Origin: Octopus sinensis
Taxonomy: Eukaryota
Direction: 5' to 3'
NCBI RefSeq assembly: GCF_006345805.1
Contig: NC_043018.1
Span: 7,936,001 to 8,000,000, forward strand
DNA: 64,000 nucleotides
Within the stretch, counting starts at the first letter, position 1. The number at the start of each line of letters is the position of its first letter. The notes beneath the pieces are model-generated. The model did no database searches, had not been told where the DNA came from, and worked only from the letters and a program-made list of their open reading frames with translations. Shown piece after piece: positions 25,312 through 64,000 of this stretch. A program made the position numbers and the translations under genes.

Positions 25312-25355
<44 letters not shown>

Positions 25356-26032
25356 TCTTTTACTCTTTTACTTGTTTCAGTCATTTGACTGCAGTCATGC
25401 TGGAGCACCACCTTTAATCGAACAACTCGACCCTGGGACTTATTCTTTTGTAAGCCCAGTACTTATTCTATCGGTCTCTTTTGCTGAACCGCTAAGTGAC
25501 GGGGACGTAAACACACCAGCATCGGTTGTCAAGCAATGCTAGGGGGACAAACACAGACACACAAACACACACACGCATATATATACATATATACGATGGG
25601 CTTCTTTCAGTTTCCGTCTACCAAATCCACTCACAAGGCTTTGGTCGGCCTGAGGCTATAGTAGAAGACACTTGCCCATGATGCCACGCAGTGGGACTGA
25701 ACCTGGAACCATGTGGTTGGTTAGCAAGCTACTTACCACACAGCCACTCCTGCGCCTATATATATGCATAAATGTAATTCTTTTCGTAAATAAATTGCAC
25801 TTCATATTCAAGGCTCTGATGAAGCTATAAGTTGTTACTCCATCACTCAACCACGAGTCCCCTGCATCTTATAGCAGAAACAGTTGTAAGCTAATGGACT
25901 TCATAAGATGATCATTTACTGCTTTGCCTTTTTATTTTCTTATGACTTGTAAAATATATAATTTCATTAATTCTTATCAAATTTTGTTAATTACTTCTTT
26001 ACTTTGTTTTATTCTTTTGTTTCTGTTTTCAG

Positions 26033-26065
26033 AGAAACTGTCCACATCTCCAGCCTTGTCCCCAC
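26033..26065 (+). CDS. Exon D1, 33-nt microexon: (E)KLSTSPALSP
   Basis: ttctgttttcag acceptor, gtacgt donor; symmetric phase 1-1 (an alternative gtatgt 4 nt downstream would break frame). Confidence 0.7.
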
Positions 26066-26602
26066 GTACGTATGTCCCTACTTCAATCAGTTATTGTTCT
26101 AATCTTTGATGAACAAAGGTGCTATCATGTGATACCATTAATACCTAGATAACAGGAGATATGTATGATATCAGAGATGTAGTTTTTTCTATAACATTTA
26201 AAAAACATTTTGCTACTATTTAAATGTTTACACTATATACCATGTCGACTTGTATGCTTGGTCATACAGTATATGTATACCCCAAGCCTTAAGTTAATTT
26301 GTGCTATAATAAAGAATCTTAATAAGTCAAAAGAAGGAAATGAAATGGAAGGGATGAGTTACAAAATAATTACCCTTATCTAAATCTGGATATACCAATC
26401 TGTATACATACTTTAGATTAATTTTATTCTAGGTGTAGGAGTGGCTGTCTGGTAAGTAGCTTGCTTACGAACCACATGGTTCTGGGTTCAGTCCCACTGC
26501 ATGGCATCTTGGGCAAGTGTCTTCTACTATAATCTCAGGCCGACTAAAACCTTGTGAGTGGATTTGGTAGACAGAAACTGAAAGAAGCCCGTCGTATATA
26601 TG

Positions 26603-26635
<33 letters not shown>

Positions 26636-27151
26636 GTTTGTGTCTGTGTTTGTCCCCCAACATCGCTTGACAACTGATGCTGGTGTGTTTACGTCCCCGT
26701 CACTTATTGGTTCGGCAAAAGAGACCGATAGAATAAGTACTAGGCTTACAAAGAATAAGTTCTGGGGTCGATTTGCTTGACTAAAGGTGGTGCTCCAGCA
26801 TGGCTACAGTCAAATGACTGAAACAAGTAAAAGAGTATTTATGGAAGGAGTCCTTTCTTTCATCCCTGACATAGGTGTTGGCTTTCTCATTGGTAATGCT
26901 TTTCCTAAATAAATTGCACTTCATATTCAAGGCTCTGATGAAGCTATAAGTTGTTACTCCATCACTCAACCACGAGTCCCCTGCATCTTATAGCAGAAAC
27001 AGTTGTAAGCTAATGGACTTCATAAGATGATCATTTACTGCTTTGCCTTTTTATTTTCTTATGACTTGTAAAATATATAATTTCATTAATTCTTATCAAA
27101 TTTTGTTAATTACTTCTTTACTTTGTTTTATTCTTTTGTTTCTGTTTTCAG

Positions 27152-27184
27152 AGAAACTGTCCACATCTCCAGCCCTGCCCCCAC
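27152..27184 (+). CDS. Exon D2, 33-nt microexon: (Q)KLSTSPALPP; tandem paralog of D1
   Basis: Same splice sites as D1, two substitutions in the exon. Confidence 0.7.
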
Positions 27185-27692
27185 GTACGTATGTCCCTAC
27201 TTCAATCAGTTATTGTTCTAATCTTTGATGAACAATGGTACTATCATGTGAGACCATTAATACTTAGATAACAGGAGATATGTATGATATCAGAGATGTA
27301 GTTTTTTCTATAACATTTATAAAAAATTTTGCTAATATTTGAATGTTTACACTATATACCATGTCGACTTGTATGCTTGAACATACAATATATGTATACC
27401 CCAAGCCTTAAGTTTATTTGTGCTATAATAAAAACTCTTAATAAGTCAAAAGAAGGAAGTGAAATGGAAGAGATAAGTTACAAAATGATTAGCCTTATCT
27501 AAATCTTTACACATACTTTAAAATAAATCTTATTCTGTTTATGGAAGGAGACCTTGACTTTCATCTCTGACTCACTTGTATTCACAATGGTTGTAGATTA
27601 AATGTTCAGTGAGTTACAACAAATGAGGATATAATGCTGTGAAGATAGAAACAAGTGATATTTCTCAATGTGATAAAAAGCAAAATGATTAA

Positions 27693-28501
27693 ACCTTTAG
27701 CATTCAGATCATTCTGTCAAATGTTAAGCTTATTTATTTACTTCATTTGGAATTAATCATGCATTTTCTTGTGTCTCCAAAATTTTGATGATGTCATTAC
27801 CATCATCATCATTTAGTGTCTGCTCTTCATGATGTTATGGGTTAGACCAGGGGTCCTCGACCAATTTTTATCTATGGACCCCTTTGATTGTTATTTTATT
27901 CTGATGTTCTCCCATAGACATTCAATGCTTAAAATCTAGTTTTATAGAAACTTCTTTCGAAATTCCTATTTCGTTTTTCACACATTAACTCGTGTAAGTC
28001 GAACTATGGAAAACATTAGAGAAAGAAACCTATCTCTTTCTTGCAATACCCACCAACACAAACATCTAAATCAAAATTTTTTCATGAGGCCTCAAAATAG
28101 TATTGTGGATCCCCAATTTATTATTTTGTTGTGTAGACCCCATAAAATCTTATATGGACTCTCAGGGGCCATACAGACCTCAGTCAAGAACCATTGGGTT
28201 AGCTGGTTTGACTGAAACTGATAAGCTGGAGAACTGTACCATGTTCCAATCTGATTTGGCTTGGTTTCTATGGCTGAATGTCCTTCCTAATGCCAATCAC
28301 TCCAAGAGTTTAGTGGGTGCCTTTTACGTATCACTAGCACCAGCCACAACTGCAATTTCACTTGGCTTGATGAGTTTTCTCAAGCACAGCAAATCACCAA
28401 AGGTCCTGATCACTTGTCATCGCCTCCGTAAGACCGAAATTTTTAGAATGACATTAGATAGAATATTTTGGGCAAATATGGTCGGTTTAAATGCTAAAAG
28501 G
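27693..28501. mobile_element. TTAA-flanked piggyBac-like MITE with nested hAT MITE and RTE-UTR fragment
   Basis: ttaa|acctttagcatt ... aatgctaaaagg|ttaa. Confidence 0.6.
27848..28196. mobile_element. hAT-type MITE
   Basis: caggggtcctcgac / gtcaagaaccattg ends; 8-bp flanks ggttagac / ggttagct. Confidence 0.65.
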
Positions 28502-28559
28502 TTAAGGTATTGTTGTAAGGAAATTTGAGTGTGTGCCAATATGAATATGTTGGCATGAG

Positions 28560-29445
28560 AATGTTTTATGCCATATTGTATTTCATTCCCCCACCCTGAA
28601 CTGATATTTCCCATCGTACTTCACCTTCATCTCTTATTACATTCACCTTTACCTCCATTTCTAACCATCTCTTATTCTCCGCTCATGCTCATATAGCCCA
28701 CCCACCCACTCTCCTTTTCCCCCTCCCCTGTCTATATCTTGCCTTGCACACTGAGGGGTTGCTATGATACTCCATCACTACCAACCCATTTTCTTCCCAG
28801 CTATTCCTACCCACCCATTATATAATGCAGGGTAGCCATCTATCATCTTTGTAATAAAGCATCTGTAGTTGTTTATAATTTTAACCTTTAAAGGTATTTT
28901 TTAATATGCTGGCCATTGCTAAAAAATTTTTTCGAAAAAATTTTATCCTACATTAAATATAAATTTAATAGTGTTCACTTCCGGACTCTTTCACTCTGTG
29001 AGATCCTCAGTTCGAATCGCACGTATCTTGAATGGGCTGGAGTATTTCTGTTTTGGATTTATTTGGGGTACTTAATTGTGCTCATGACTTAGTGTTTTGC
29101 TTCTTCCATGGGTATGAGTAAGTATCTCATTTATTTCTTTTGCCACATTTATCACTGACGAAGGGAGGGTTCTTATGAACTAACCCTGAAATCGGTCCGA
29201 TATGGTAATAATGGAATTTTTTGGAAATTTCTGTCAGCCTTTTTTTCGAGTAGCGTGCATATTGTAAAAAATTATATGGTTATGGACAATATGTCCAATT
29301 TTCGGCATATGTGGCATTAGAAATTTTTTCGTTTGCCCTTATTTATAAGTTGTTTATAATTTTAACCTTTAAAGGTATTTTTTAATATGCTGGCCATTGA
29401 TAAAATTTTCTTTCAGAAAAATTTTAACCTACATTAAATATATAT
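28560..29445 (+). mobile_element. Penelope-type 3' end/partial tandem pLTR with hammerhead (copy ~49980-50870)
   Basis: ~95-nt direct repeat at 28867 and 29348 (period 481) brackets the hammerhead; ends in (TA)n. Confidence 0.6.
29150..29202 (+). ncRNA. Type I hammerhead ribozyme motif in Penelope-type 3' fragment
   Basis: UAUCA-CUGACGA-AGGG..GUUC uuau GAAC..CCCU-GAAA-UCGG-UC-CGAUA; stem I has one core-proximal A:C mismatch. Confidence 0.7.
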
Positions 29446-29809
29446 ATATATATATTATCATTATCATCATTGTTTAATGTCTGCTTACAATACTGGCATG
29501 GGTTGGACAGTTTTACAAGAGCCAACCAGGTAGAAGACTACCCCAGGCTACTGTGTCTATTTTGGCATGGTTTTTACAGCTGGATGCCCTTCCAACTGTC
29601 AACCACTTCACAATGTGGACTGGATGCATTTTAAGTGGCACCAGCACCAGAAAGGTCACCAACTAACTTGCAAGGCAAGAGGGGAAGGGGCATTGGAAGA
29701 GGTGATCTTGTGTCAGATGATGAAAGGTGAGAGTGTGATGGAGAGACAGAAACAGGTGTCTTGCTAAAGAGGAGGAGGTGATCATGTATCAGATTATGAA
29801 AGGTTAGAG

Positions 29810-30009
29810 CAGTGGTTTTCAACCAGGGTTCTGCCAGTACAGTCCAGGGGTTCCGCAAGAAGTTACAAAACTGCTAAAATCGGCAGTAATTTTAAATTCT
29901 CCTCTGCAGGTATGTGTGCATAAAACTATTAAATTATTGCACAGGGGTTCCCCGAGCCAGGGAATGCTTCCTTGGGGTTCCGCTCCAGCAAAAAGTTTGA
30001 AAAGCACTG
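29810..30009. mobile_element. hAT-type MITE, 200 bp (copy 51230-51428)
   Basis: TIR cagtggttttcaacc / gtttgaaaagcactg; perfect 8-bp TSD ggttagag. Confidence 0.85.
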
Positions 30010-30119
30010 GGTTAGAGTGTGACAGAAAGTGTATATTTATATATCTATTAGTGTATATCAGGGTAAATCTTTCTGCAGTGATAAGAATTTTTTTCTTTTG
30101 TCTGATCTCCATTTATCTC

Positions 30120-30388
30120 ATGGTTGTAGGAAATTTCACCGTAAGCAGTTTTACTGTAGGAAAAATTCACTGTAAAAAAAAAATAAATAAATTGCAAAAG
30201 AAAAAATTACAATGGTAACTTCATCAACAAACCTACTAACTGGAAAAAAGTCATTTCTTTATAATGAGTTTTCTTATTTTTAGTGTGACTCTTTTATGAC
30301 AAAACTTCTTACGGCAAATTTTCCCATGGCAAATTTTTTACAGTGGATTCCCACAGAAAATTGCTTACGGAGAATTTTCCAGACACGT
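30120..30388. mobile_element. Foldback/MULE-like MITE with ~15-bp subrepeats in its inverted arms
   Basis: ggaaatttcaccgtaagcagttttactgtaggaaaattcactgtaaaaaa resembles the reverse complement of the right arm (ggaaaattctccgtaagcaattttctgtgggaatccactgtaaaaaa). Confidence 0.55.
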
Positions 30389-31554
30389 TCACCTACTAAG
30401 TCAGACACAAACTGATAACTTAGTGTTTTGTCAATAACCTACTTGGTATGAATGTACTTGACTTTATATACCTCATCACCGTAGTTACAAATTAAGTTAC
30501 ATCCTTTTGAGTTAACAAATTTGTTTGTTTTGTTTTTTTTATGGCTTTTTAGCAATTATTTTTTCTGTTATTTTTCTAAGCAAGATACTATAGCAACTTG
30601 CACACACACACACACACACACACACATTTTAAACTGTTGAACCAAATTCCAAAGAAACGACCAACTTTCTGATGGGCAAACCTTGACTCCTCATCACACC
30701 TAAAACCACTGGCCCCTATCTCCAATTCTTCTATTTGTATTGCAATGATTCCTGATGCTCTGAAATAACATGCTTCCCCTACTAAGACTAACCAAGACTA
30801 ACCATTATACTCTATGTTAAAAAAATTATTGATTCTTTATCTTGCATTTTGTGAACTAATAGCACTATTGATTACAGGTTTTCAATGGATCAATCACTGA
30901 TCCAATACATTTGTGACAGCAAGACACTAACAAGGGTGGAGTTGGTAGTTTACTTCTGTTTGGTGCCTGATGCCAAAAATCAAAGAAGTTACATGGGAGA
31001 TGGGATTGAAAAGACTAAACACAAAGACTTAACGTTTTCATTAAACCCTTTGATTTTTTTTTGCACTTCCTCTTGAAAAGGAAGTAAAGGTGGGGTGGGG
31101 GCTGGAAAATGGCAATGATATAATAATGAATTTATTTATGCAGTGCTCAGGTGCTGTACTACAACTCATCAGAAAAAGTAACCAAAACTGCATGAACGGT
31201 ACGTAGAATATGCACAGGAAGTAAACAATGAATGAGTCGTTTAGAAAACAAAAAAGGACAAAAAAAAAAAAAGAACAGGTGTACTGTTGGTGATGATGGT
31301 GATGATGATGATGATGATGATGACAAAGACAGCAGCACCAACAAAAGCAACTTCAGTGATTGATTCTCAGAAAGGCAAGAGGCCAGAAATAAGTGGCAGG
31401 GAGAGTAACAGTCAATTAGATCACCCTCAGTATGTGACTGGTACATTATTTATTTACTCTGAAAGAATGAAGGGCAAAGTTGATCTTGGTAGGCTGTAAT
31501 TTTAAATATGCTAAATATTTTGTTGGACATTGTAAAGATTTGACCAATCTAATA

Positions 31555-31935
31555 CAGTGGTGGTGGTGGTGGTGGTGGCAGTAGTAGTGGTAGTAGTAAC
31601 GGCAGCAGCATAGTTGTAGTAGTAGTAGTAGTAGTAGTAACAGCAGCAGCATAGTAGTAGTAGTAGTAACAGCAGCAGCAGCAGCCGTTCAAGGATTTTG
31701 ACCTGGAGATTTCCATTTCCAGCAACTTCGAGGGGCCACCTCCCAGTGGTGTTGGGCGTCAACAAAGAGCCCTCGACTACAACAAGACGACCAAAGTTTT
31801 TTTTTTCTTCCAAGGTCTGGTGTCTCCCGCCCCTAAGCCCTAGACCATCACCTAATCACCCTTACCCGCCTTGTTGCTTAACAACAACAGCAGCAGCAGT
31901 AGCAGTAGTAGTTGTAGTAATAGTAGTAGTGCTCT
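31555..31935. repeat. Mixed (TGG)n/(TAG)n/(CAG)n trinucleotide repeats (copy ~52975-53355)
   Basis: Direct reading. Confidence 0.9.
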
Positions 31936-32650
31936 CTCCAAGCAAATTCGTTACAAAGTAGATGAGAATGGTGAAAATAGAAAGGAGACCAGTTGAGAAA
32001 AAGACAGAGAGAATTTGCCGTCCTTGATGAGGATAATATTGAACTTGTGAGATTCCTTCATTGACACTAGGTGGAAGTTCTTCATCAGAAACCCTGTATC
32101 ATCATTTATTCGTAATATTGTGCAATACGTTTTTACCTCGTTTGATTTTTGTCGCTTGATATTTGTGTAACCCTCCACACTTGGTGCGTTTGTGGCGAAT
32201 AAAAGAAACCATCATCACCACCACCACCTACCTCCACTATTACTGTGGCCACCACTACCATAAAGCACTGCCTCCTAACCTCACCACCCATCACCACCAC
32301 CATCACCATTGTCCTCCTACGTCTCCCCAAGTTGCTCAGGTCATCAACATCAGTTTACACTTATTTCTTTCATAATTTTCTCCACCAAAATTTAGACATT
32401 TTTGGAGAGAGAACAGAGGATTAAAAACATTTGGATGTTTCTCTTAATGAGGGGAGGCACAGTTATTTTTTTCCTATTGTCTATATCTAAAGGCTAAATG
32501 TTGTTTTAAAAAAACATCAACAAATTTGTTTTTTGATTCAGGAAGACTGGAAGATTGTTAGGAAGCAGCTATGATAGCCATGAATGCAGTTAATAAGGAA
32601 CTAAAGTAGTTATAAGTAACACATATACATAGAACCTATTTAAATTTCCA

Positions 32651-33212
32651 TCACCAGTCTGGAACCCCTATCTTGCCCAGGATATTAATCATCTGGAAAC
32701 CGTTCAGTGACGTGCAACAAAGAGTATACCCTCCATCAGGCATTTGCCTTATTCTGAATGCCTTACTTCCCTGGGCATGGACACATTGAAACTCCAATGT
32801 CTGGCAGCTGACTTGGCAGACACCCATAAAATTATTAACCATCTTACAAACAATAACTCTGAGCACCTTTTCAAACTCCACCCGTCGGCATATTTACAAA
32901 GTCAGAAAACAGCACAGCTCCCATGACTTTCGGAAACATTTTTTCACGCTAAGAGTTTCTGAAGCATGGAACAAACTGCCAGCATCAGTTGTTTGTTGTC
33001 GGAGCACTGCATCCTTCAAAACTTCCATGCTTCCTGAGATTCGCCAAAACTACACCTGATTTTCTCCCCTCCATACACACACAAGCATGTATCTGACTCA
33101 TACACTGTTCACTTCCCAGACATTTGTACATTACTGCATATGCTTTATACGCACTTTCTGACAAGTTGTGGTGCACCTGAGCACTGTATACAATAATTTC
33201 ATTATTATTATT
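32651..33212 (+). mobile_element. CR1/L2-group LINE 3' fragment (copy 54070-54631)
   Basis: Same family as 16478-17075. Confidence 0.85.
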
Positions 33213-33939
33213 AAAATTTTGGCCCTGTTACTATGGAAGAGATTCATCATCATCATTGTTGTTGTTGTCGTCATCACTGCCGCCATCATCATCATCATCA
33301 TTTAACGTTCTTGCTTCCATGCTGGCATGAGTCAGATGGAATTTTTGTGGGCATGAATTTCTACAGCTGGGTGCCTTTCCTGACACCAACCCTCACTTGT
33401 CTCCAAGCGATGTAATATTTCCTCATGTTTCTCAGGGCAAACTGGAAAAGAACTACATCGCTTGTATAAAGGTGACATCTCATAATGTCAGCCATCTAAC
33501 ATTATGTCAAGATCAGAGTCAAAAAAGGTAAAAAAGGTAAAGACCCCTTTTGGTCAGGAATGATCATGGGACTACACCTAAAAAGTTCCCGTCTGAGGCA
33601 CAAGTCTGGGCAAGGTTGTTTATGGAAGACCAGCAGCTGCCCACACATATCAACCACTCCATGCCACTGATGTTATCCAAGGGAAAGGCAAAGGCCAATA
33701 CAACTTGGCATCAGTGACATTGCAACTCATTTCTACAGCTAACATGAATTAAAGTGTCTTGCTCAAGAACACAACACTCGGCTCAGTCTGAGAATCAAAC
33801 TCACCACCACATGATTGTGAGCCTGACACTTTAACCACTGAGCTATGTGCCTTCACATAAAAGCACTGCCTATCAAGACAAGAGTATACACCAATATGCG
33901 ATGGGCTTCTTTCAGTTACCATCTATCATATCCACTTAA

Positions 33940-34165
33940 GTGGAGGCACGTGGCTTAGAGTGCTGGTCTCATGATTGCAGGATTGTGGTTTCTGTTCCTG
34001 GACAAGGCAATGCGTTGTGTTCTTGAGCAAAACACTTCATTTCATGTTGCTCCAGTCCACTCAGCTGGCAAAAATGAGTAATCCTGCTATGGACCAGCAC
34101 CCCATATGGAAACTTGGAAACCAGGCTTTATGAGTTGGTATGACTCGAGAAGGTAACTTTACCTT
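33940..34165 (+). mobile_element. SINE with 15-bp TSD
   Basis: tcatatccacttaag on both sides; the paralogous site at ~43233 (tcatatccgcttaag) is empty. Confidence 0.75.
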
Positions 34166-34375
34166 TTCATATCCACTTAAGATACTGTAGACAACTTGAA
34201 GCTACAACAGAAGATGCTTATCCAATGTGTTACACAGTGAGACTGAACCTGAGACCACCTGTTTGGGAAGTAAACTTCTTAACCACACAGCCATGCCTGC
34301 ATCAATGTAAGAAATTATGAATTTTAAATTAATTATGTAATAATTAAAATTATCATTTTCAATTTATGTTCACAG

Positions 34376-34470
34376 GTAACAACATAATACCACCTCCAAT
34401 TCCTCCAATACGTAAAAAAGATAGCCAGCACATAACGAGGGAACAGAATAAATTTAGTTCAGAGGCAAAT
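34376..34470 (+). CDS. Exon E1 (95 nt): (R)NNIIPPPIPPIRKKDSQHITREQNKFSSEAN
   Basis: tttatgttcacag acceptor, aat|gtaagt donor; phase 1 to 0; PxxPxR motif. Confidence 0.85.
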
Positions 34471-34624
34471 GTAAGTTTATTTATGGTTGTTGTAGTTTTT
34501 GTTCAGCCCTGGTCAGCTCTGATAGAGAAGATTAAGGACCAAAGATATTCCAGCCATGACTGCTTCACCTTTTTCTGTACCCAGGATTTGAGTATTTAAT
34601 ACATCCTTCCTTTTTCACGACAAT

Positions 34625-34975
34625 CGGTTGTGATTTTGGACAATAGGGTGTGATTTTGTTTCTTATTTCTAGCACATCAAACAACCACATTATACTGTCC
34701 TCATCCAAATGCAGCACATGTTTTCACCGGTGCAGTCTTCTTTCTTGCGCACTACGCTTGATTCCTTTTATGCTCAGGTTTTCTTTCAGCATATTTATGC
34801 TACGTTGTTCATGTACGTTAACATTGCACATCAAACAAATCAAGCTCACTTTATTTCTTTCCAGTCTTCTCATGCCCTCTGCATTCAAGGCCCATGTCTC
34901 ACTACCATGCAGCACTGCAGTTCTAAACACAAGCCTCATACAATCTGCCGTTAACTTTTAGAGAAATCCTTTGTT
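34625..34975 (-). mobile_element. RTE-clade LINE fragment (copy ~56040-56395)
   Basis: VLHGSETWALNAEGMRRLERNKVSLICLMCNV...ERRLHR. Confidence 0.8.
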
Positions 34976-35616
34976 GCCAACAGGCTCCAGTCTTGATCTG
35001 GCAGAGTTTCTACAGCTGGATGCACTTCCTAACACCAACCACTCCAAGAGTGCAGTGGGTGGTTTTATGTTCCACTAGCACGAGGGCCAATCAGGCGGTA
35101 CTTGCCTTGACATGAAATTTCCCGGTTTCCATAGGATAGATATTGCCCACCGGTATGAGGTGTCGGTCCATAGCAGGATTACTCAGTTTTGCCAGCTGAG
35201 TGGGCTGGAGCAACATGAAATTTGTTCGGCCCTTTTCTTACTCTGGTTACAATTCTTTCAGAGGAACTACCTCCCTTGTTAATTACATTTCCAAGGTAAC
35301 AAAAGCTTCCAACTACTTCTAGTGAGCCATCTGAGCGACTCAGAGAGTCTATTTCCTGAGTCTGCTTCCTGTATGCTCATAGTGTATCTACTGCTCCAGT
35401 ACATCTATCACATACAAAGTTTATGTTCTCTGCGAGTCTGTCTGTGACTCCATCATGTCACTCCTTCTGGAATCTTTGTTAGCAGCTATATGTAATCAAT
35501 AAGAATCAAAATGTATGAGTGGCTGTTCTCCCACTTTGTGGGCACACACGCACACACATAAATTGTTTATAATGAATGTGACACATGGTGTTGGTTAAAA
35601 AACCAACAGATATAGG

Positions 35617-35697
<81 letters not shown>

Positions 35698-37142: not shown

Positions 37143-37450
37143 GTTGTTTGTTCCTTCTCAAGCCATGCCTGGCTCATAAGGGCCGGTTTCCTTGGCGTAT
37201 AGGTTCCCCACCTGGACGGGACGCCGGTCTGTCGCAGGTGAGCTCAAGATACAGGAGGAAAGAGAAAGAGAAAGTTGTGGCGAAAGAATCAGCAGACATT
37301 TCACCATTACCTTCTGCCGGAGCTGCATGGAGCTTAGGTGTTTCGCTCATAAACACACACATCGCCCGGCCTGAGATTCGAACCCGCGATCCCTCGACGA
37401 TCCTCTGGACGGGAGTCCGCTGCTCTAAACACTAGGCCATGTGCCTCCAC
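37143..37450 (-). mobile_element. CpG-rich (young) tRNA-derived SINE inserted in an RTE-UTR repeat (copy ~58555-58852)
   Basis: Head gtggaggcacatggcctagtg...gggttcgaatc; TSD tcagtgcc(a/g)ct. Confidence 0.75.
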
Positions 37451-48575: not shown

Positions 48576-48608
48576 AGAAACTGTCCACATCTCCAGCCCT
48601 GCCCCCAC
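48576..48608 (+). CDS. Exon D2' (copy of D2)
   Basis: Identical to 27152-27184. Confidence 0.6.
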
Positions 48609-53600: not shown

Positions 53601-55794
53601 TGGTGCGTTTGTGGCGAATAAAAGAAACCATCATCACCACCACCACCTACCTCCACTATTACTGTGGCCACCACTACCATAAAGCACTGCCTCCTAACCT
53701 CACCACCCATCACCACCACCATCACCATTGTCCTCCTACGTCTCCCCAAGTTGCTCAGGTCATCAACATCAGTTTACACTTATTTCTTTCATAATTTTCT
53801 CCACCAAAATTTAGACATTTTTGGAGAGAGAACAGAGGATTAAAAACATTTGGATGTTTCTCTTAATGAGGGGAGGCACAGTTATTTTTTTCCTATTGTC
53901 TATATCTAAAGGCTAAATGTTGTTTTAAAAAAACATCAACAAATTTGTTTTTTGATTCAGGAAGACTGGAAGATTGTTAGGAAGCAGCTATGATAGCCAT
54001 GAATGCAGTTAATAAGGAACTAAAGTAGTTATAAGTAACACATATACATAGAACCTATTTAAATTTCCATCACCAGTCTGGAACCCCTATCTTGCCCAGG
54101 ATATTAATCATCTGGAAACCGTTCAGTGACGTGCAACAAAGAGTATACCCTCCATCAGGCATTTGCCTTATTCTGAATGCCTTACTTCCCTGGGCATGGA
54201 CACATTGAAACTCCAATGTCTGGCAGCTGACTTGGCAGACACCCATAAAATTATTAACCATCTTACAAACAATAACTCTGAGCACCTTTTCAAACTCCAC
54301 CCGTCGGCATATTTACAAAGTCAGAAAACAGCACAGCTCCCATGACTTTCGGAAACATTTTTTCACGCTAAGAGTTTCTGAAGCATGGAACAAACTGCCA
54401 GCATCAGTTGTTTGTTGTCGGAGCACTGCATCCTTCAAAACTTCCATGCTTCCTGAGATTCGCCAAAACTACACCTGATTTTCTCCCCTCCATACACACA
54501 CAAGCATGTATCTGACTCATACACTGTTCACTTCCCAGACATTTGTACATTACTGCATATGCTTTATACGCACTTTCTGACAAGTTGTGGTGCACCTGAG
54601 CACTGTATACAATAATTTCATTATTATTATTAAAATTTTGGCCCTGTTACTATGGAAGAGATTCATCATCATCATTGTTGTTGTTGTCGTCATCACTGCC
54701 GCCATCATCATCATCATCATTTAACGTTCTTGCTTCCATGCTGGCATGAGTCAGATGGAATTTTTGTGGGCATGAATTTCTACAGCTGGGTGCCTTTCCT
54801 GACACCAACCCTCACTTGTCTCCAAGCGATGTAATATTTCCTCATGTTTCTCAGGGCAAACTGGAAAAGAACTACATCGCTTGTATAAAGGTGACATCTC
54901 ATAATGTCAGCCATCTAACATTATGTCAAGATCAGAGTCAAAAAAGGTAAAAAAGGTAAAGACCCCTTTTGGTCAGGAATGATCATGGGACTACACCTAA
55001 AAAGTTCCCGTCTGAGGCACAAGTCTGGGCAAGGTTGTTTATGGAAGACCAGCAGCTGCCCACACATATCAACCACTCCATGCCACTGATGTTATCCAAG
55101 GGAAAGGCAAAGGCCAATACAACTTGGCATCAGTGACATTGCAACTCATTTCTACAGCTAACATGAATTAAAGTGTCTTGCTCAAGAACACAACACTCGG
55201 CTCAGTCTGAGAATCAAACTCACCACCACATGATTGTGAGCCTGACACTTTAACCACTGAGCTATGTGCCTTCACATAAAAGCACTGCCTATCAAGACAA
55301 GAGTATACACCAATATGCGATGGGCTTCTTTCAGTTACCATCTATCATATCCACTTAAGTGGAGGCACGTGGCTTAGAGTGCTGGTCTCATGATTGCAGG
55401 ATTGTGGTTTCTGTTCCTGGACAAGGCAATGCGTTGTGTTCTTGAGCAAAACACTTCATTTCATGTTGCTCCAGTCCACTCAGCTGGCAAAAATGAGTAA
55501 TCCTGCTATGGACCAGCACCCCATATGGAAACTTGGAAACCAGGCTTTATGAGTTGGTATGACTCGAGAAGGTAACTTTACCTTTTCATATCCACTTAAG
55601 ATACTGTAGACAACTTGAAGCTACAACAGAAGATGCTTATCCAATGTGTTACACAGTGAGACTGAACCTGAGACCACCTGTTTGGGAAGTAAACTTCTTA
55701 ACCACACAGCCATGCCTGCATCAATGTAAGAAATTATGAATTTTAAATTAATTATGTAATAATTAAAATTATCATTTTCAATTTATGTTCACAG

Positions 55795-55889
55795 GTAACA
55801 ACATAATACCACCTCCAATTCCTCCAATACGTAAAAAAGATAGCCAGCACATAACGAGGGAACAGAATAAATTTAGTTCAGAGGCAAAT
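55795..55889 (+). CDS. Exon E1' (copy of E1)
   Basis: Identical to 34376-34470. Confidence 0.65.
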
Positions 55890-57034
55890 GTAAGTTTATT
55901 TATGGTTGTTGTAGTTTTTGTTCAGCCCTGGTCAGCTCTGATAGAGAAGATTAAGGACCAAAGATATTCCAGCCATGACTGCTTCACCTTTTTCTGTACC
56001 CAGGATTTGAGTATTTAATACATCCTTCCTTTTTCACGACAATCGGTTGTGATTTTGGACAATAGGGTGTGATTTTGTTTCTTATTTCTAGCACATCAAA
56101 CAACCACATTATACTGTCCTCATCCAAATGCAGCACATGTTTTCACCGGTGCAGTCTTCTTTCTTGCGCACTACGCTTGATTCCTTTTATGCTCAGGTTT
56201 TCTTTCAGCATATTTATGCTACGTTGTTCATGTACGTTAACATTGCACATCAAACAAATCAAGCTCACTTTATTTCTTTCCAGTCTTCTCATGCCCTCTG
56301 CATTCAAGGCCCATGTCTCACTACCATGCAGCACTGCAGTTCTAACACAAGCCTCATACAATCTGCCGTTAACTTTTAGAGAAATCCTTTGTTGCCAACA
56401 GGCTCCAGTCTTGATCTGGCAGAGTTTCTACAGCTGGATGCACTTCCTAACACCAACCACTCCAAGAGTGCAGTGGGTGGTTTTATGTTCCACTAGCACG
56501 AGGGCCAATCAGGCGGTACTTGCCTTGACATGAAATTTCCCGGTTTCCATAGGATAGATATTGCCCACCGGTATGAGGTGTCGGTCCATAGCAGGATTAC
56601 TCAGTTTTGCCAGCTGAGTGGGCTGGAGCAACATGAAATTTGTTCGGCCCTTTTCTTACTCTGGTTACAATTCTTTCAGAGGAACTACCTCCCTTGTTAA
56701 TTACATTTCCAAGGTAACAAAAGCTTCCAACTACTTCTAGTGAGCCATCTGAGCGACTCAGAGAGTCTATTTCCTGAGTCTGCTTCCTGTATGCTCATAG
56801 TGTATCTACTGCTCCAGTACATCTATCACATACAAAGTTTATGTTCTCTGCGAGTCTGTCTGTGACTCCATCATGTCACTCCTTCTGGAATCTTTGTTAG
56901 CAGCTATATGTAATCAATAAGAATCAAAATGTATGAGTGGCTGTTCTCCCACTTTGTGGGCACACACGCACACACATAAATTGTTTATAATGAATGTGAC
57001 ACATGGTGTTGGTTAAAAAACCAACAGATATAGG

Positions 57035-57111
<77 letters not shown>

Positions 57112-60100
57112 GTAAGTGTGTGTGTATATGTTTGTGTGTCTGTGTTTGTCCTCCCAACATCGCTTGACAACCAGTGCTGGTGTGTTTACGTCCCCATAAC
57201 TTATCGGTTCGGCAAAAGAGACCGATAGAATAAGTACTAGGCTTACAAAGAATAAGTCCTGGGGTCGATTTGCTCGACTAGAGGCAGTGCTCCAGCATGG
57301 CCACAGTCAAATGACTGAAACAAGTAAAGAAAAAGAAAAGAATATGTACTATAGCAATGAAACAAAAAATCTGTTGCCACACCAGTTTTATATATCATCA
57401 ACATCATCATATAATGTCCGTTTTCCACGCTAGCATGGGTTGGACAGTTCAACCGGGGTCTGAGAAGCCAGGAGGCTGCACCAGGCTCCAGTCTGATCTG
57501 GCAGTGTTTCTACAGCTGGATGCCCTTCCTAACGCCAACCACTCCGTGAGTGTAGTGGGTGCTTTTTACGTGCCACTGGCACAGGGGCCAGATGAGGCTG
57601 GCAAACGGCCACGATCGGATGGTGCTTTTACATGTCACCGACACGGATACCAGTCAGGCGGCGCTGGCAACTAACACGTTTGGATGGTGCTTTTAACCTG
57701 TCACTGGCATGGGTATCTTAACTACAATTTCCATTTGATTTTCATTTTGATGTTGGTGTTAACGTACCTGACTCAACAGGTCTCCTCAAGAACAGCGGGT
57801 CACTCTATGATCCAAGGTTAGCACAGCAGGCCATCCTACGAGCCATGGACTCCCTTCATTTGTCGGGTCTTCAAAGTCACAGCATATCTCCAGAGGTCTC
57901 GGTCTTTCGTCATAGCCTCTGTGAGGCTCAACATACGAAGGTCATACTTGACCACCTCATCCTCGTATTTTTTTTACATACACGCACACATGCACATACA
58001 TATTCACGCACACACACAGACACATAATTATGAGAGGAAAACACTAAGCATGAATTCAGTATTGCTTTTATTTCATCTGTTACACATGTTTCTGCAATTA
58101 ATGTTTGATGATGGCAAATGATAAATGCAATTCATAAAGAACATTTGATCACACAGAGGCAAGGTGCCGCCAGTTTGATAATTTTGTCATGCACCTAACA
58201 CAAGCATCTGTTTCCACTTTGTGTGTGTATATATGTATGTGTGTATATGCATGTCCTTTCTGTTTTAATCTTTTCATGTTTATACATACTGGAACATAAA
58301 AGTCAATGTGGAACTCTTAAGAAAACAGTAGCAGTCATACATCTGTTTCTACACACATATACTATCTATATACATAATTCAAAGTCAGAGGGTAAGAAAG
58401 TAAAACCTTTGTCTATATATGTATATATATATATATATGCCGGTGGCACATAAAAAGCACCATTTGAGCGTGATCATTACCAGCATCGCTTTACTGGCAC
58501 TTGTGCCAGTGGCACATGAAAGACAACATTCAAGCGAGGTCGTTGTCAGTGCCACTGTTGTTTGTTCCTTCTCAAGCCATGCCTGGCTCATAAGGGCCGG
58601 TTTCCTTGGCGTATAGGTTCCCCACCTGGACGGGACGCCGGTCTGTCGCAGGTGAGCTCAAGATACAGGAGGAAAGAGAAAGAGAAAGTTGTGGCGAAAG
58701 AATCAGCAGACATTTCACCATTACCTTCTGCCGGAGCTGCATGGAGCTTAGGTGTTTCGCTCATAAACACACACATCGCCCGGCCTGAGATTCGAACCCG
58801 CGATCCCTCGACCGGGAGTCCGCTGCTCTAAACACTAGGCCATGTGCCTCCACTCAGTGCCGCTAGACTGGTTCCAGTGCAGGTGGCATGTAAAAAACAC
58901 CATTTGAGCATGGCCGTTGCTAGTACCGCCTGACTGGCCCTCATGCCGGTGGCGCGTAAAGCACCTGCTACACTCTCGGAGTGGTTGGTGTTAGGAAGGG
59001 CATCCGGCTGTAGAAACTCTGCCAAATCAAGATTGGAGCCTGGTGCAGCCATCTGGTTCACCAGACCTCAGTCAAATCGTCCAACCCATGCCAGCATGGA
59101 AAGCGGACATTAAACAATGATGATGATGATGATGATGATGATATATATATTATAAAATAATGAAGGTAACTAAACGCAATATAAAACTAAAAAGGAAAAA
59201 ATTCAATTGTCACTAATGGTGCAGGGTAGCACCTACATTGCTAGAAATAAAAGCTTTAAAACCCTTAAAGCTGCAAGGAAACACTTTCCATAGATTGACA
59301 GGGGAGACAATAGCGAGATCACTATACAAGTCTAGTTTTGTTTAAGATTAAAGCTCATCAGTGGTGACTATTCCATCGCTGGATGGTTTGGCTAAATCCT
59401 GACTGTCAGTGGTATATATATATATATATATCATCATCATCATCATCATCGTTTAACGTCCGTTCTCCATGCTAGCATGGGTTGGACGGTTCGACCGGGG
59501 TTCTGGGAAGCCAGAAGGCTGCACCAGGCTCCAGTCTAATCTGGCAATGTTTCTACAGCTGGATGCCCTTCCTAACATATATATATATATATGTATATAT
59601 TGTCATCATCATAAATCTCTCTATATAAAGCTGAAGTTGTCTGTGTATGGCAGGTTTGGTAGCCTTCAACTAACACTATCTCCTCCGAGACCCTGCGGCA
59701 CAAGTTGACCAAAATTGAGAGTATGATAGAAGAAGGTGTGCTCTTCCTTCAGTAGAAGAAAAAATTCAAATTGGACCATGTTAACACCAAAATTTATTTA
59801 CATCAAAAAGGTGTTTTTTTTCTATGAAAATCCCTATTTTTTACGATTTTTTGACTGCTGTGTCGTCATTTTTCGGTGTATTTCAACCAGAAAAATGTTC
59901 ACTTAAAGAGAGTAACAAGCTACATAATGCAAAATGTTTACTTTTCAAAAATTCCAATTCTAAAGAGTCGAAAAGAAAACAAGCCCAAGCAACGCTGGGC
60001 TATACTGCTAGTATGTATAGATAAATATTATATGTATGTATGCACGTGAAAGGATCAAAATAGAAAGGACACACTAATTTGTAGATGCAGAAAAAGACAG

Positions 60101-60407
60101 GCAGGTCATGACTGGAAAGCTGGAATTCCTTTAATTATAGGTTGTTGACTCAATCAGAGTGACCTAGGGCTAAACTACAATAACAATATTATAAATCAAA
60201 TTAACTGAAAAGCATTGGAGTATCAAACTAAACTTATTTAGTTTCCATTCTTCAAGTGCCCGGTTCAAATTTTCCCTGGCTTCACTTGATTTTCCAGTGT
60301 AAAGGGTTGATCAGAATCAATTTAATTTGCAATTTATCTCCAAATTTGGGAAACTCATGGAAAGGGACAAAATCATTATCGTATATATTATTTTCATTTC
60401 TTCTCAG

Positions 60408-60492
60408 AGCAGACAATTTTCCAAAGATCCTAATAAAGCCCCTGAAAGTTTATCACAAGCATTCTCAAAACTGAGACCAGTTGCAACTAGTT
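60408..60492 (+). CDS. Exon F1' (copy of F1)
   Basis: Identical to 38993-39077. Confidence 0.65.
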
Positions 60493-63154
60493 GTAAGGAA
60501 GATGATGAAGGTTGGTAAATATTTCTTTCCAATTCCTATAAAAGTGCTATCAACTTTATATTATCCATGGATAATTTTTTCTCAGCTTAACGATCAAGCT
60601 TGTTACCTTGCCCCAGTTTTTTTTTTTTTTTTATGGAGGTTTCAACAAAACCAAAGGCCCCTGAGATCTTAACTGAAAACCTCAATTAATATATGCACCT
60701 GTTACCATTTTATATTTCTTTAATCTGGTACCGAACTCCTTGGTTTTCAGATGACCGATAGCATAACTGACATCATTCCAATACGCAGACACTGCTTTCG
60801 TCTTAGTTAAGTGCCTTTCTTAAGATATCTTTGACAACAACGGCTCCGATGTGAAAGAAAGGGGTGTGACAAAATAAGCAGAGCAGATGATGAAACATCT
60901 TGGAGTATTCTGGTCCATCTCTTTATGTTGAGACTTCAAATAAATTTAAATATTAATGAGATATTGAATTAGATATAATTGGTAGTTCCTTCTACTCAAA
61001 ATTTTCTGGTCTTGGCATTGAACAAGTACATACACAACAGTTTCATTGCTCTGCACACATTTGGGACAAGTACATTCAATGGAACTCCTATGTCTGTAGA
61101 GTTTGTCTCAAACTGATGGCATCCTTTGGTAGCACTGGTTGTCCAAGAAGTTTTGGAAATTATCCATAGTAATCCCCAATTGGAAAGTCCTCTGAAACAG
61201 ACTCACCAGTTTGCTTTTGGTGTTACCCAGAATCTCCTTTAGAACTTTGTCACTAATCCCTTATAGATTCTCATGTTAAAATGCACAGGCCTTAACTCTG
61301 ACAATGCAACTTTCATGTTTCACCTTGAAAAAATGGTCAAAGGCATGCTTGCCATTAGCATGTTGGTTGTGATGCCTTTACTAATTGCCTCTTCTAGATC
61401 GCTAGCTCATTCTCCCTCTGAACTATTTCTGTTGCTAGCTTTTTGCTAAACATATCAATTCTGCTTTAATCACACTCTTCAGGATGCTCCATCACCAGCT
61501 TCATTAATTACAGCTTAACGAGTACATAGATCTGATTCCTGTAGCTTTTGCATGCTGGTAGGAATGCACTCAACTTCCAATGAACAATTCCCTGTCTAGA
61601 GTCTTATCTAAATCAACTGAGTAAATCACAAATTTGTGGTCTGTGTAGCCAACCAGCTTGAACTGTGGACATTCGATGCCATCCCTGCCCCCTGCCACAA
61701 CAAATACTTTATCTAGATATGATCTGGATGACCCACTGTGGTTGATCCATATCCATACTGTCACATCAAGGAAATCTAGCTGGTACCTATCAAAACGTTG
61801 GAAACAGTGCAAGTTTTTGAGACTTCTGCACCTCTTTCTCCTATGTGTTAACTCTTCCACAGTCATTATATACATCTAGAAGACAATTCCACTCACCCAC
61901 TTATACTAAAGGGCAAGATGTTCCAAGGAAACTTTCTAGATGCCTGAAGAAATTAGGCCGATTTGTTCTGGTCTGAGCATAGATGGCCACCAGTCTGAAG
62001 GGTCCACTTTCCCTGCCATTCATGTCCAGGATCACCAAATTACCATTCAGGTTCAGGAAGATTCTTCGTATTTCAAGGTTCAAGGATTTCCAGAACAGCA
62101 CTGCTACCCCACCACTCAAACTCAACAAACCGCAGGATAGGAAAATTTTGTAAGCATTGGAAATGGGTGTCAGGTTGTGTGGTGCTCCAGAAATCTTTGT
62201 CTCACTAATGGCTGACACATCTATATCCAGCGACTTGAATTCATTGAGCAAGCGACCCTGCTTCCAAACTAAATCCAGGCCCTGAATGTTTACACAACAT
62301 ATTCTAAGTGTAGCCTTTTAGGCAAGAGACACCGACCCCCTTATTCCTTATTCCTGCCAACATTACCACCACACCGTACTCCCACAACTGTTCCCACCAC
62401 TGTACTCTCATCACCACATCCACCGGCTTTATTCTCCTCCACTCCCAGCTGTCATCAACATCATTGTTCGACCGTGGTCAAGACAATGGAATTTACCATG
62501 CTACGCCAGACTTCACGGTCCATCATGGCATTATGGAGGTCCTGTTGCTGGATGCCTGTATCCCTGGAGATTACATCAGGGTAGGAGAGTGCGCGCCCTC
62601 TGGTATTGCGAGTAGATGGCTTCCAGAGGAGAAGAGGAGAAATTACCTCGTTTTCAGCTCTACCACAATGTCCAGCAAACTGGACTCTCCTACCTTTCAC
62701 AAGAGATGACACAGGTGCTAGTTTCCCATATATTTGTACTTTGGTTGGATGACGCTTCCACGAGAGATTTTGAGCTCTCATAAGGAGGCGAGTGTAGGTT
62801 CCATCCAACCGCCTCTCAAGCTTCTTTGATAACGTCCAGGTTTCTGCGTCATATAGTAGAATTGGTTCGACTGTGGCTGTTCTCATCATTAACATCAGTG
62901 ATCCATAAATTTACACCATTTTTTAATAAATTTTCTCCACTAAAGTTACCTAGACATTTTTGGAGAGAAAAAAAGGATTAGAACCTTTGAATGTCTCTCC
63001 TAATCAGGCTGGGCACAGTTATCTTTCCCTATCGTCTATATTTAAAGGAGAAATGTTATTAAAAATGTCAACAAACTTGTTTGAGGCAGGAAGATTGTTA
63101 TGGAGCAGCTGTGATAGCCATGAATGCAGTTAATAAGGAACTAAAGTAGATATA

Positions 63155-63223
<69 letters not shown>

Positions 63224-64000
63224 AATATAAATAATGGCGGCGAGCTGGCAGAAACGTTAGCACGCCGGGCGAAATGCGTAGCCGTATTTCGTCTGTCATT
63301 ACGTTGTGAGTTCAAATTCCGCCGAGGCCGACTTTGCCTTTCATCCTTTCGGGGGGTTGATAAATAAAGTACCAGTTATGCACTGGAGTCGATGTAAACG
63401 ACTTAATCCCTTTGTCTGTCCTTGTTTGTCCCCTCTATGTTTAGCCCCTTGTGGGCAATAAAGAAATATATATATATATATATATAGAACTCATTTAAAA
63501 TTTTGGCCTTGTCAGTATGGAAGAAAGTCATCATCATTGTTGTTGTTGTTGTTGTTGCATCATTGTCATTTCATCACCATCATCATCATCGTCATTTAAC
63601 ATTCACATTCCTATGCTGGTACAAGTCTAGTGGAATTTTTTTGAGGCATGCTTTTCTGTTGTTGGGTACCCTTCTTGTCACTAACCCTCACCTGTTTTCC
63701 ATGCAGCGTAAGATTTTCCCATGATTCTCAGCAAACTGGAAAAGGACGACGTTGGTTGTATGATGGTTACGCTCATTTACAACCATCGCATGAAGTCAAG
63801 ACAAAGATACATACAAATACACACACATACACGTATGCACATATATATATGCATGCACACACACACAAACATATACATGAATATAACTGCCTTTCGGATG
63901 TACAAATTTTAATATACACCAGTAATGACATTCTCACTGCTATTGCCTTCTCTGTATATTGCATAAATGTAAATTTTTTTCCCCAAATAAATTCCACTTC

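What the first reader, a model, noticed from the sequence alone, without database searches (positions are those of the whole stretch)
25313..64000. 21.4-kb intragenic tandem duplication at a (TA)n junction that would double six exons in phase
Seen: 25313-~42590 recurs from 46738. Both units begin at a (TA)n run, but the sequence left of it differs (Penelope pLTR in unit 1, a truncated CR1 fragment before unit 2). The last exon of unit 1 (F2, corrected) ends in phase 1 and D1' starts in phase 1. Spot checks gave about a dozen substitutions in the first ~5 kb (e.g. gcagt/gcggt, ccctgg/ccccgg, aggtta/aggttg), then mostly 1-nt indels. Inference: unequal exchange between two intronic (TA)n tracts doubled the Pro-rich module block, possibly as a copy-number polymorphism. 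A false haplotype duplication in the assembly is the alternative.
Basis: partly seen in the sequence, partly recalled or inferred. Interest (0 to 1): 0.75.

Follow-up and report, generated by a model that had tools for sequence, protein, structure and literature searches.

The report
Young 21-kb tandem repeat, reality unproven
The window does contain a near-identical 21.4-kb head-to-tail repeat joined at the edge of a (TA)21 tract, but it lies in transposon-rich DNA with no demonstrable exons, and the sequence alone cannot tell a recent duplication from an assembly error.

Summary
Bases 25312-42589 recur at 46737-64000 (period 21,425 bp) with 17 substitutions and 48 indel events. A perfect (TA)21 starts both units. 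A Penelope-like element lies left of unit 1 and a CR1-like fragment lies left of unit 2.

The junction looks like one non-homologous join. The CR1-like copy is homologous to its relatives right up to G46737, which overlaps by 1 nt the outer edge of an unchanged (TA)21. A second, distal (TA)n is not visible.

Differences between the units are mosaic:
- 16 of 17 substitutions lie in the first 4.7 kb, with derived states on both units, so they are biological.
- The indels at 36.5-42.6 kb are mostly single bases missing from unit 1 in short runs, and they break LINE reading frames that unit 2 keeps. These are consensus errors.

I found no support for "six exons". The splice-like mini-exons sit inside older repeats and diverge neutrally. 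My protein searches for them were uninformative.

Verdict: real recent tandem duplication about 0.5, false assembly duplication about 0.4. Read depth, junction-spanning reads and the next 5 kb of sequence would decide. Interest is low.

The parts
25312..46736 (.). Unit 1 of the direct repeat, 21,425 bp. Its last 4.1 kb (42590-46736) has no visible partner because unit 2 runs off the window.
   Evidence: Self-BLAST; base-by-base comparison.
46737..64000 (.). Unit 2, cut by the window end after 17,264 bp.
25313..25354 (.). Perfect (TA)21 at the start of unit 1. As a single DNA strand it folds into a 20-bp hairpin (-12.1 kcal/mol, z = -5.6).
   Evidence: TRF; fold; sequence.
46738..46779 (.). Perfect (TA)21 at the start of unit 2, the same length as in unit 1.
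   Evidence: TRF; sequence.
46732..46738 (.). The only novel junction. The CR1-like sequence ...CAGCTG meets (TA)21. G46737 can be assigned to either side, giving 1 nt of microhomology.
   Evidence: Alignment to the 16.6-kb copy, which continues as CCAGACATCGG...; three-way alignment.
46307..46737 (-). CR1-like LINE 3' fragment with an (ATT)n tail at its left end. It stops at the junction, while related copies (16477-17057, 32650-33213) extend at least 155 bp further.
21478..25567 (-). Young Penelope-like element. ORFs lie at 23867-25171 and 22410-23870 (RT with YVDD, then GIY-YIG), split by one 1-nt loss in a T run. The inverted arms are 21478-22255 and 24779-25567. The right arm runs across the duplication breakpoint into the first 256 bp of unit 1.
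   Evidence: ORFs; arms; 5115 relatives; GIY-YIG weak Pfam hit; frameshift.
25355..25759 (.). First element of the unit: one copy of a ~405-bp SINE-like repeat with at least 12 copies in the window, in both orientations. Its unit-2 copy is at 46780-47183.
25393..30043 (.). Substitution-rich segment holding 16 of the 17 substitutions (0.34%; roughly 11 transitions to 6 transversions; 3 at CpG). Derived states occur on both units.
36556..42564 (.). Indel-rich segment of unit 1. Of 36 indel events, 26 are bases missing from unit 1, and 17 of those fall in runs of 1-4 nt.
40158..41489 (-). LINE fragment (endonuclease and RT C-terminal parts), frameshifted in unit 1. The unit-2 copy at 61573-62910 keeps ORFs of 138 and 149 aa.
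   Evidence: ORF lists; indel positions.
26033..26128 (+). Candidate mini-exon D1, with a strong acceptor and a GT donor, inside the 614-bp repeat R1 (25774-26387). D2 at 27152-27247 lies in R2 (26893-27506). Both are unverified.
   Evidence: R1/R2 are 96% identical.
34376..34470 (+). Candidate mini-exon F1 (Pro-rich, 31 codons). Its paralogue F2 is at 43438-43532. Both lie at the 3' end of an 82%-identical ~330-bp block that starts with a degenerate SINE end. Both are unverified.

Best explanation
This is a very young direct tandem duplication of a 21,425-bp stretch of transposon-rich, apparently non-coding DNA, probably from an octopus.

Shown: the single novel junction joins a point at or inside a CR1-like LINE fragment (46737) to the outer edge of a perfect, hairpin-forming (TA)21 tract (25312/25313). 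That tract abuts a young Penelope-like element. The two sides share one base.

Inferred mechanism: a replication fork stall or a break occurred at the (TA)n hairpin or cruciform. It was repaired by template switching or end joining 21.4 kb away, on the sister chromatid or the homologue, giving A-B-B-C. If the partner was the homologue, the two copies started out as two alleles. That would explain why substitutions are confined to one 4.7-kb segment.

Most of the 48 indel differences are not biological. They are residual long-read consensus errors, so the true identity is about 99.9%. The duplication is not shown to affect any gene.
For: - Head-to-tail repeat with one junction and no N between the copies.
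- Identity begins exactly at the edge of the tract, and the junction tract equals the unit-1 tract (21 repeats).
- Only about 24 of the unit's 21,425 positions lie within 1 nt of an edge of a long TA tract (4 tracts). A chance coincidence is therefore about 0.1% (my calculation), so the tract is causally involved.
- (TA)21 folds into a 20-bp hairpin as single-stranded DNA.
- The CR1-like copy is homologous to its relatives up to the shared G, and the relatives continue beyond it.
- Substitutions are transition-biased, three are at CpG, and derived states lie on both units. Unit 1 is derived at 25393 and 25434. Unit 2 is derived at 26650 and 25716. They are therefore real variants, not errors of one poor copy.
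- In a gapless contig the junction should be carried by reads (inference).
- Overall divergence of 0.1% is too low to explain why a long-read assembler would keep two haplotypes apart (inference, using the description of heterotype duplications in PMC9516828).
Against: - No read depth, spanning reads or second assembly could be examined.
- The stretch with deletion-type differences is contiguous in the assembly, at about 36.5-57.1 kb. It is roughly one unit long and centred on the junction, as expected if the extra copy has thin read support.
- The mosaic of 0.34% versus 0.008% substitution divergence is what two alleles of one locus would show.
- (TA)21, the most mutable tract, is identical in both copies while nine shorter microsatellites differ.
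- The Penelope-like element with inverted arms next door is a structure reported to upset assemblies (PMC8557442).
- The end of unit 2 lies outside the window.
Confidence: 0.5

Rival explanations
1. False duplication made by the assembly. One genomic copy of the unit was written twice, from two haplotypes or from under-collapsed error-rich reads. Two overlapping contig ends, or a gap closure, were joined at the (TA)n tract.
For: - There is a contiguous error-rich stretch of about one unit length centred on the junction. In 36.5-42.6 kb, 26 of 36 indels are bases missing from unit 1, 17 of them in runs of 1-4 nt. In the first 10 kb, 11 of 12 indels are bases missing from unit 2.
- The unit-2 state keeps LINE ORFs open and agrees with paralogues at 7 of 10 informative sites.
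- The two ends of that stretch fall at the compound TA tract at 35617-35737 and its unit-2 copy. The join falls at another TA tract, as contig ends often do.
- The allele-like mosaic of substitutions.
- Identical (TA)21 in both copies.
- The general residual indel error level: the young Penelope-like ORF is broken by a single 1-nt loss.
Against: - No gap (N) lies between the copies, whereas gaps between same-scaffold duplicates are one of the four hallmarks in PMC9516828.
- 0.1% divergence gives an error-prone-read assembler little reason to split haplotypes.
- A chimeric read joining two points 21 kb apart in direct orientation is improbable.
- A contig starting exactly at the first base of the tract and carrying the whole tract is also a coincidence.
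Confidence: 0.4
2. Unequal homologous exchange between two intronic (TA)n tracts duplicated six Pro-rich exons in phase, possibly as a copy-number polymorphism of a gene.
For: - A (TA)21 sits at the start of both units.
- The unit holds other long TA tracts.
- Splice-like mini-exons with very good acceptors and open frames exist on the + strand (D1, D2, F1, F2).
- The + strand has about twice as many such candidates as the - strand and three times as many as shuffles. That strand is also T-rich, which inflates acceptor scores.
Against: - The junction tract is exactly the unit-1 tract, and identity starts at its edge.
- The CR1-like copy appears cut at the junction. Its 3' flank shows no TA tract or matching target duplication.
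- No distal tract is visible.
- The candidate exons lie in older repeats. They are not better conserved than their flanks, and they show pN/pS 0.68 and codon-position differences of 6/5/9.
- They have no Pfam match above cut-off.
- My D and F candidates have phases (0,0) and (1,0), which do not chain directly.
- One candidate is antisense to a LINE ORF.
Confidence: 0.05
3. The visible pair is part of a larger array (three or more units) or of a longer segmental duplication whose unit is not 21.4 kb.
For: Unit 2 runs off the window, so neither copy number nor the true right boundary is known.
Against: Nothing upstream of 25312 matches the end of the unit apart from transposon-level similarity of 93% or less. 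The array therefore starts at 25312.
Confidence: 0.05

Closest known systems
Tandem duplication copy-number variants with blunt or microhomology junctions (end joining, or fork stalling with template switching / microhomology-mediated break-induced replication). This comparison rests on my own knowledge of the structural-variation literature.
   Same: Direct head-to-tail orientation, a single novel junction, 0-1 nt of microhomology, a breakpoint at a secondary-structure-forming AT-rich repeat, and kilobase-scale size.
   Different: Existence in the organism is unproven, the second boundary was not seen, and no population or read data are available.
False duplications in genome assemblies, heterotype and homotype (Ko et al. 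2022, PMC9516828).
   Same: Near-identical copies side by side on one sequence, SNP-like differences confined to part of the copy, and an error-rich consensus in part of each copy.
   Different: There is no gap between the copies. Divergence is far lower than the 'more divergent haplotype' situation described there. Depth, k-mer and linked-read criteria could not be tested.
Unequal crossing-over (non-allelic homologous recombination) between flanking repeats.
   Same: It yields a direct tandem duplication with a repeat at the junction.
   Different: It needs a homologous tract at both ends. Here only the proximal (TA)21 is seen, and the junction tract is unchanged in length. A 42-bp dinucleotide tract is a poor recombination substrate (my knowledge).
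Penelope-like retroelements with inverted pseudo-LTRs and a (TA)n insertion bias (Craig et al. 2021, PMC8557442).
   Same: The element left of unit 1 has an RT followed by a C-terminal GIY-YIG, inverted terminal repeats, and a (TA)n on both sides.
   Different: It is a neighbour of the duplication, not part of it. Its arms also include 213 bp of a host SINE. No hammerhead ribozyme was found.

Membership tests
Real tandem duplication (copy-number variant) | Two copies in direct orientation, head to tail, with one novel junction | tested here: met
   offset 21,425 bp, same strand, junction at 46736/46737.
Real tandem duplication (copy-number variant) | Reads spanning the junction, and twofold copy number in reads | not testable with these tools
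   No reads and no second assembly are available. Exact look-ups of window ORFs found nothing.
Real tandem duplication (copy-number variant) | Junction signature of non-homologous or microhomology-mediated repair | tested here: inconclusive
   There is a 1-nt (G) overlap. The distal side was inferred from a related CR1-like copy, not from the ancestral allele.
Unequal exchange between two (TA)n tracts | A (TA)n tract at both ends of the ancestral unit, with a third tract after unit 2 | not testable with these tools
   The expected position, about 68,162, lies outside the window.
Unequal exchange between two (TA)n tracts | Hybrid junction tract; distal flank is a natural neighbour of a TA tract | tested here: not met
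   The junction tract is identical in length to the unit-1 tract. The CR1-like copy stops mid-family at the junction, and its 3' flank has no TA tract. This is indirect evidence.
False duplication (criteria of PMC9516828) | [quoted passage not shown] | tested here: not met
   There is no N anywhere in the window. Criteria are quoted.
False duplication (criteria of PMC9516828) | Half (heterotype) or very low (homotype) read depth; single-copy k-mers; discordant linked reads | not testable with these tools
   No read data are available.
False duplication (criteria of PMC9516828) | Error-laden, under-collapsed consensus in one copy | tested here: met
   Unit 1 at 36.5-42.6 kb lacks single bases in short runs and breaks LINE ORFs that unit 2 keeps. 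The same can happen when polishing a real duplicate.
Penelope-like element (left flank of unit 1) | Reverse transcriptase followed by a C-terminal GIY-YIG endonuclease | tested here: met
   The ORF at 22410-23870 carries YVDD and a GIY-YIG-like motif. It has 5115 relatives, the best reaching 47-54% identity, one of them an Octopus bimaculoides protein. Pfam RVT_1 and GIY-YIG hits are in the right order but below cut-off.
Penelope-like element (left flank of unit 1) | Pseudo-LTRs, direct or inverted | tested here: met
   793-bp inverted arms differ by 2 substitutions and about 6 indels. The feature is described in PMC8557442.
Penelope-like element (left flank of unit 1) | Hammerhead ribozyme in the pseudo-LTR | tested here: not met
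   The Rfam search at E <= 1 over 21300-25800 found only microsatellite-driven miRNA look-alikes. Some clades lack canonical hammerheads.
Protein-coding exons inside the unit | Similarity to a known or predicted protein | tested here: inconclusive
   Three concatenated-ORF searches found nothing, but neither did the built-in Penelope and LINE controls in the third. There are no Pfam hits above cut-off.
Protein-coding exons inside the unit | Purifying selection: the exon better conserved than its flanks, with an excess of third-position changes | tested here: not met
   F1/F2: exon identity 0.77-0.85 against 0.90-0.92 just upstream; pN/pS 0.68; differences by codon position 6/5/9. D1/D2: 4 differences in 96 bp against 23 in 614 bp overall. 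Counts are small.
Protein-coding exons inside the unit | Canonical splice sites around an open frame | tested here: met
   D1, D2, F1 and F2 have acceptors above the 99th percentile and GT donors. This is necessary, not sufficient.

The most novel reading that the evidence does not exclude
The same (TA)n tract is both the insertion site of a young Penelope-like element and the breakpoint of the 21.4-kb duplication. Breaks at (TA)n microsatellites, from cruciform cleavage or from nicking by the element's GIY-YIG endonuclease, might therefore be a recurrent source of large tandem duplications in octopus genomes. A second, less likely reading is that the duplicated block carries real Pro-rich mini-exons and the duplication is a protein-length polymorphism.
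Probability: 0.06. Interest if true: 0.5.

Novelty: new member of a known kind. Interest (0 to 1): 0.2.

Why it matters
If real, it is one more young tandem duplication with a breakpoint at a hairpin-forming AT dinucleotide tract. It would be useful as a copy-number marker and as a datum on how (TA)n tracts and Penelope-like elements destabilise a cephalopod genome, but it has no shown effect on a gene. If false, it flags about 21 kb of duplicated, poorly polished sequence that would inflate repeat and gene counts and mislead read mapping at this locus. In either case the claim of in-phase exon doubling should not be passed on without RNA evidence.

Tried and rejected
1. Three searches of the 5.8-billion-protein index used concatenated stop-free segments:
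- unique ORFs of the unit;
- ORFs inside the older repeats plus the Pro-rich ones;
- upstream ORFs plus Penelope and LINE ORFs as positive controls.
All returned nothing. The controls also failed, although the Penelope ORF alone has 5115 relatives in the exhaustive library. The concatenation approach does not work with that tool, so these negatives carry no weight.

3. Exact look-ups of window ORFs, meant to fetch DNA beyond the window end or independent contigs, found nothing on record.

4. Pfam on transposon and candidate ORFs gave only sub-threshold RVT_1 and GIY-YIG hits.

5. tRNA scan: none. Rfam at gathering threshold found only a 5S-like hit far upstream.

6. I considered a heterozygous Penelope insertion as the trigger of a haplotype bubble. 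I rejected it because unit 2 is preceded by the end of unit 1, not by the element's left flank.

7. I considered strand composition skews as a sign of transcription. T>A together with C>G on the + strand fits neither orientation.

8. My F candidates end in phase 0.


Full report
OBSERVATION

A self-comparison of the window gives one dominant alignment, 25312-42589 against 46737-64000, on the same strand with an offset of 21,425 bp. It has 99.44% identity over 17,311 columns, 17 mismatches and 48 gap openings. The alignment ends only because the window ends. Unit 1 is therefore 25312-46736, and unit 2 is seen for 17.3 of its 21.4 kb. The window contains no N. Both units begin with a perfect (TA)21, at 25313-25354 and 46738-46779 (sequences).

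SURROUNDINGS

About 47% of the window matches other parts of the window, even with the large repeat left out. The repeats include:
- a ~405-bp SINE-like element in at least 12 copies and both orientations;
- three copies of a LINE 3' end with an (ATT)n tail;
- LINE endonuclease and RT fragments;
- a mariner-like remnant and a 5S-like sequence.

Left of unit 1 lies a young retroelement on the minus strand.
- Its ORFs are at 23867-25171 and 22410-23870. [quoted passage not shown]
- The ORFs are separated by what looks like a single 1-nt loss in a T run, judged against full-length relatives.
- The second ORF has 5115 relatives in the exhaustive protein library. The best named one is an Octopus bimaculoides protein at 54% identity.
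- This protein hit, and my recollection of the SINE sequence, are the only pointers to the organism. The mix of transposon families fits published octopus repeat surveys (PMC13282606).
- The element has 793-bp inverted arms, 21478-22255 and 24779-25567. This matches the inverted pseudo-LTRs described for Penelope-like elements, which also favour (TA)n targets (PMC8557442).
- No hammerhead ribozyme was found.

The right arm runs through the (TA)21 into the first 213 bp of the SINE, so the duplication breakpoint lies inside it. I cannot explain why host SINE sequence is part of the arms.

THE JUNCTION

Left of unit 2 is a CR1-like fragment, 46307-46737 on the minus strand. Aligned to the copy at 16632-17057, it is homologous right up to G46737. 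The other copy then continues as CCAGACATCGG... for at least 155 bp. In unit 1 the tract is preceded by AAACG.

The junction is therefore ...CAGCT-G-(TA)21, with one base that either side could have contributed. The junction tract has exactly the length of the unit-1 tract. The 3' flank of the CR1-like fragment has no TA tract and no sequence matching the junction side.

All this fits a single non-homologous join between a point in, or at the 5' end of, the CR1-like copy and the outer edge of the tract. It fits recombination within two TA tracts less well. That model needs a distal tract that is not visible, and a hybrid tract that happens to keep the same length.

The unit holds four long TA tracts. 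Only about 24 of its 21,425 positions lie within 1 nt of a tract edge, so the coincidence is unlikely to be chance (about 0.1%, my calculation). The tract played a part, either biologically or technically. Biologically, it folds into a 20-bp hairpin as single-stranded DNA. Technically, contigs and alignments tend to end at such tracts.

DIFFERENCES BETWEEN THE UNITS

Substitutions:
- 16 of 17 lie in the first 4.7 kb, at 0.34% against 0.008% in the remaining 12.5 kb (binomial p = 1e-8).
- Transitions outnumber transversions by about 11 to 6, and three sit at CpG.
- I compared each site with other copies of the same repeat families. Unit 1 is derived at 25393 and 25434. There unit 2 agrees with 11-13 other SINE copies and with the inverted arm of the Penelope-like element.
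- Unit 2 is derived at 26650 and 25716.
- These are therefore real variants on two lineages, either alleles or paralogues. They are not errors of one bad copy.

Indels:
- In 36.5-42.6 kb, 26 of 36 events are bases missing from unit 1. Of those, 17 fall in runs of only 1-4 nt.
- The unit-2 version keeps LINE ORFs of 138 and 149 aa that are frameshifted in unit 1.
- The unit-2 version agrees with older paralogues at 7 of 10 informative sites.
- This is not a natural mutation spectrum. It is residual deletion-type consensus error, the same kind that seems to break the Penelope-like ORF.
- In the first 10 kb the polarity is reversed: 11 of 12 indels are bases missing from unit 2 (Fisher p = 1.4e-4). 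Many of these lie in long homopolymers or microsatellites and could be real.

Put together, the poorer sequence is one contiguous stretch of the assembly. It spans about 36.5-57.1 kb, is about one unit long, and is centred on the junction. Its ends lie near the compound TA tract at 35617-35737 and that tract's copy in unit 2.

REAL OR ARTEFACT

For a real duplication:
- the sequence is gapless, so the junction should be carried by reads;
- there is no N between the copies, whereas gaps are one of four hallmarks of same-scaffold false duplications (PMC9516828);
- divergence is far too low (0.1%) to make an error-prone-read assembler keep haplotypes apart;
- the breakpoint sits exactly at a structure-forming repeat.

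For an artefact:
- the error-rich stretch around the junction is about one unit long, as expected when the extra copy has thin support;
- the mosaic of substitutions looks allele-like;
- the (TA)21 is identical in both copies while nine shorter microsatellites differ;
- a Penelope-like element with inverted arms sits next door, a structure said to trouble assemblies.

Two of these points cut both ways. A real duplication formed by exchange between homologues would also start with allele-like mosaic differences. A real near-identical duplicate would also polish badly.

I put a real duplication at about 0.5, a false one at about 0.4, and other arrangements at about 0.1. Read depth, spanning reads and the next 5 kb of sequence would settle it.

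THE EXON CLAIM

No stop-free segment of the unit has a Pfam match above cut-off. A scan for acceptor-ORF-donor triplets finds a few strong candidates, all on the + strand:
- D1 at 26033-26128 and D2 at 27152-27247. Both lie in the two 96%-identical 614-bp repeats next to SINE copies.
- F1 at 34376-34470 and F2 at 43438-43532. Both are Pro-rich and lie at the end of an 82%-identical block that begins with a degenerate SINE end.
- 41031-41162, which is antisense to a LINE ORF.

The + strand has about twice as many candidates as the - strand, but it is also T-rich, which inflates acceptor scores.

The candidates show no sign of constraint.
- F1/F2 are less conserved than the 60 bp upstream of them.
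- They have pN/pS 0.68, with differences spread 6/5/9 over the codon positions.
- D1/D2 differ as much as the rest of their repeat.
- My D and F candidates have phases (0,0) and (1,0), so they do not chain directly. I could not reproduce a six-exon in-phase model.

Homology tests failed for technical reasons, so absence of a match is not evidence. The claim of in-phase exon doubling is unsupported rather than disproved. I give it about 0.05.

COMPARISON AND VERDICT

The closest known kinds are two. One is an ordinary tandem duplication copy-number variant with a blunt or microhomology junction at an AT-rich structure-forming repeat. The other is a false duplication of the sort catalogued by Ko et al. 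Nothing here lies outside known kinds. Interest is low (0.2).

The most novel reading not excluded is that (TA)n tracts targeted by Penelope-like elements are recurrent breakpoints for large duplications in octopus genomes (probability about 0.06).

Noticed in passing
window 21478-22255 and 24779-25567: The inverted arms of the Penelope-like element each contain about 533 bp of element sequence, a (TA)18 or (TA)21 tract, and the first 213 bp of the neighbouring SINE. They differ by only 2 CpG substitutions and about 6 indels. Host flank inside a pseudo-LTR is unexpected. It could be flank copying at integration, a separate inverted duplication, or an assembly problem.
   Followed up: partly
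window 23860-23875 (minus strand): The otherwise open ~860-codon ORF of the Penelope-like element is split by what looks like one missing T in a T run, judged against full-length relatives. This is probably a consensus error and a hint at the general indel error level of the assembly.
   Followed up: partly
window 4070-4188 (minus strand): Full-length 5S rRNA match (74 bits, E = 7e-14) sitting between interspersed repeats. It is probably a 5S-derived SINE head or a 5S pseudogene.
   Followed up: no
window 25865/26984 and 47289/48408: Both copies of the internal 614-bp repeat carry C in unit 1 and A in unit 2 at the homologous position. This parallel difference needs gene conversion between the two internal repeats, or a polishing effect.
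   Followed up: no
window 32348-34503 vs 41483-43565; 38884-39386 vs 44074-44545; 38326-38598 vs 6-273: Older same-strand duplications (75-90% identity) lie inside and around the unit, with offsets of about 9.0 kb and 5.2 kb. The locus seems to have duplicated before.
   Followed up: partly
window 43764-44048: A 285-bp sequence that is its own reverse complement at 92% identity (a palindrome).
   Followed up: no
window 17311-18011 (+ strand): A LINE ORF2 C-terminal-like ORF (17311-17721) is followed by a mariner/Tc1-like transposase remnant carrying the motif WPSRSPDLTPPDFF. I identified both by eye only.
   Followed up: no
window 35617-35737 and 57035-57150: A compound (TA)~40/(TG)n tract where the polarity of the indel differences between the two units switches. 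All three microsatellites here are one unit shorter in unit 2.
   Followed up: partly
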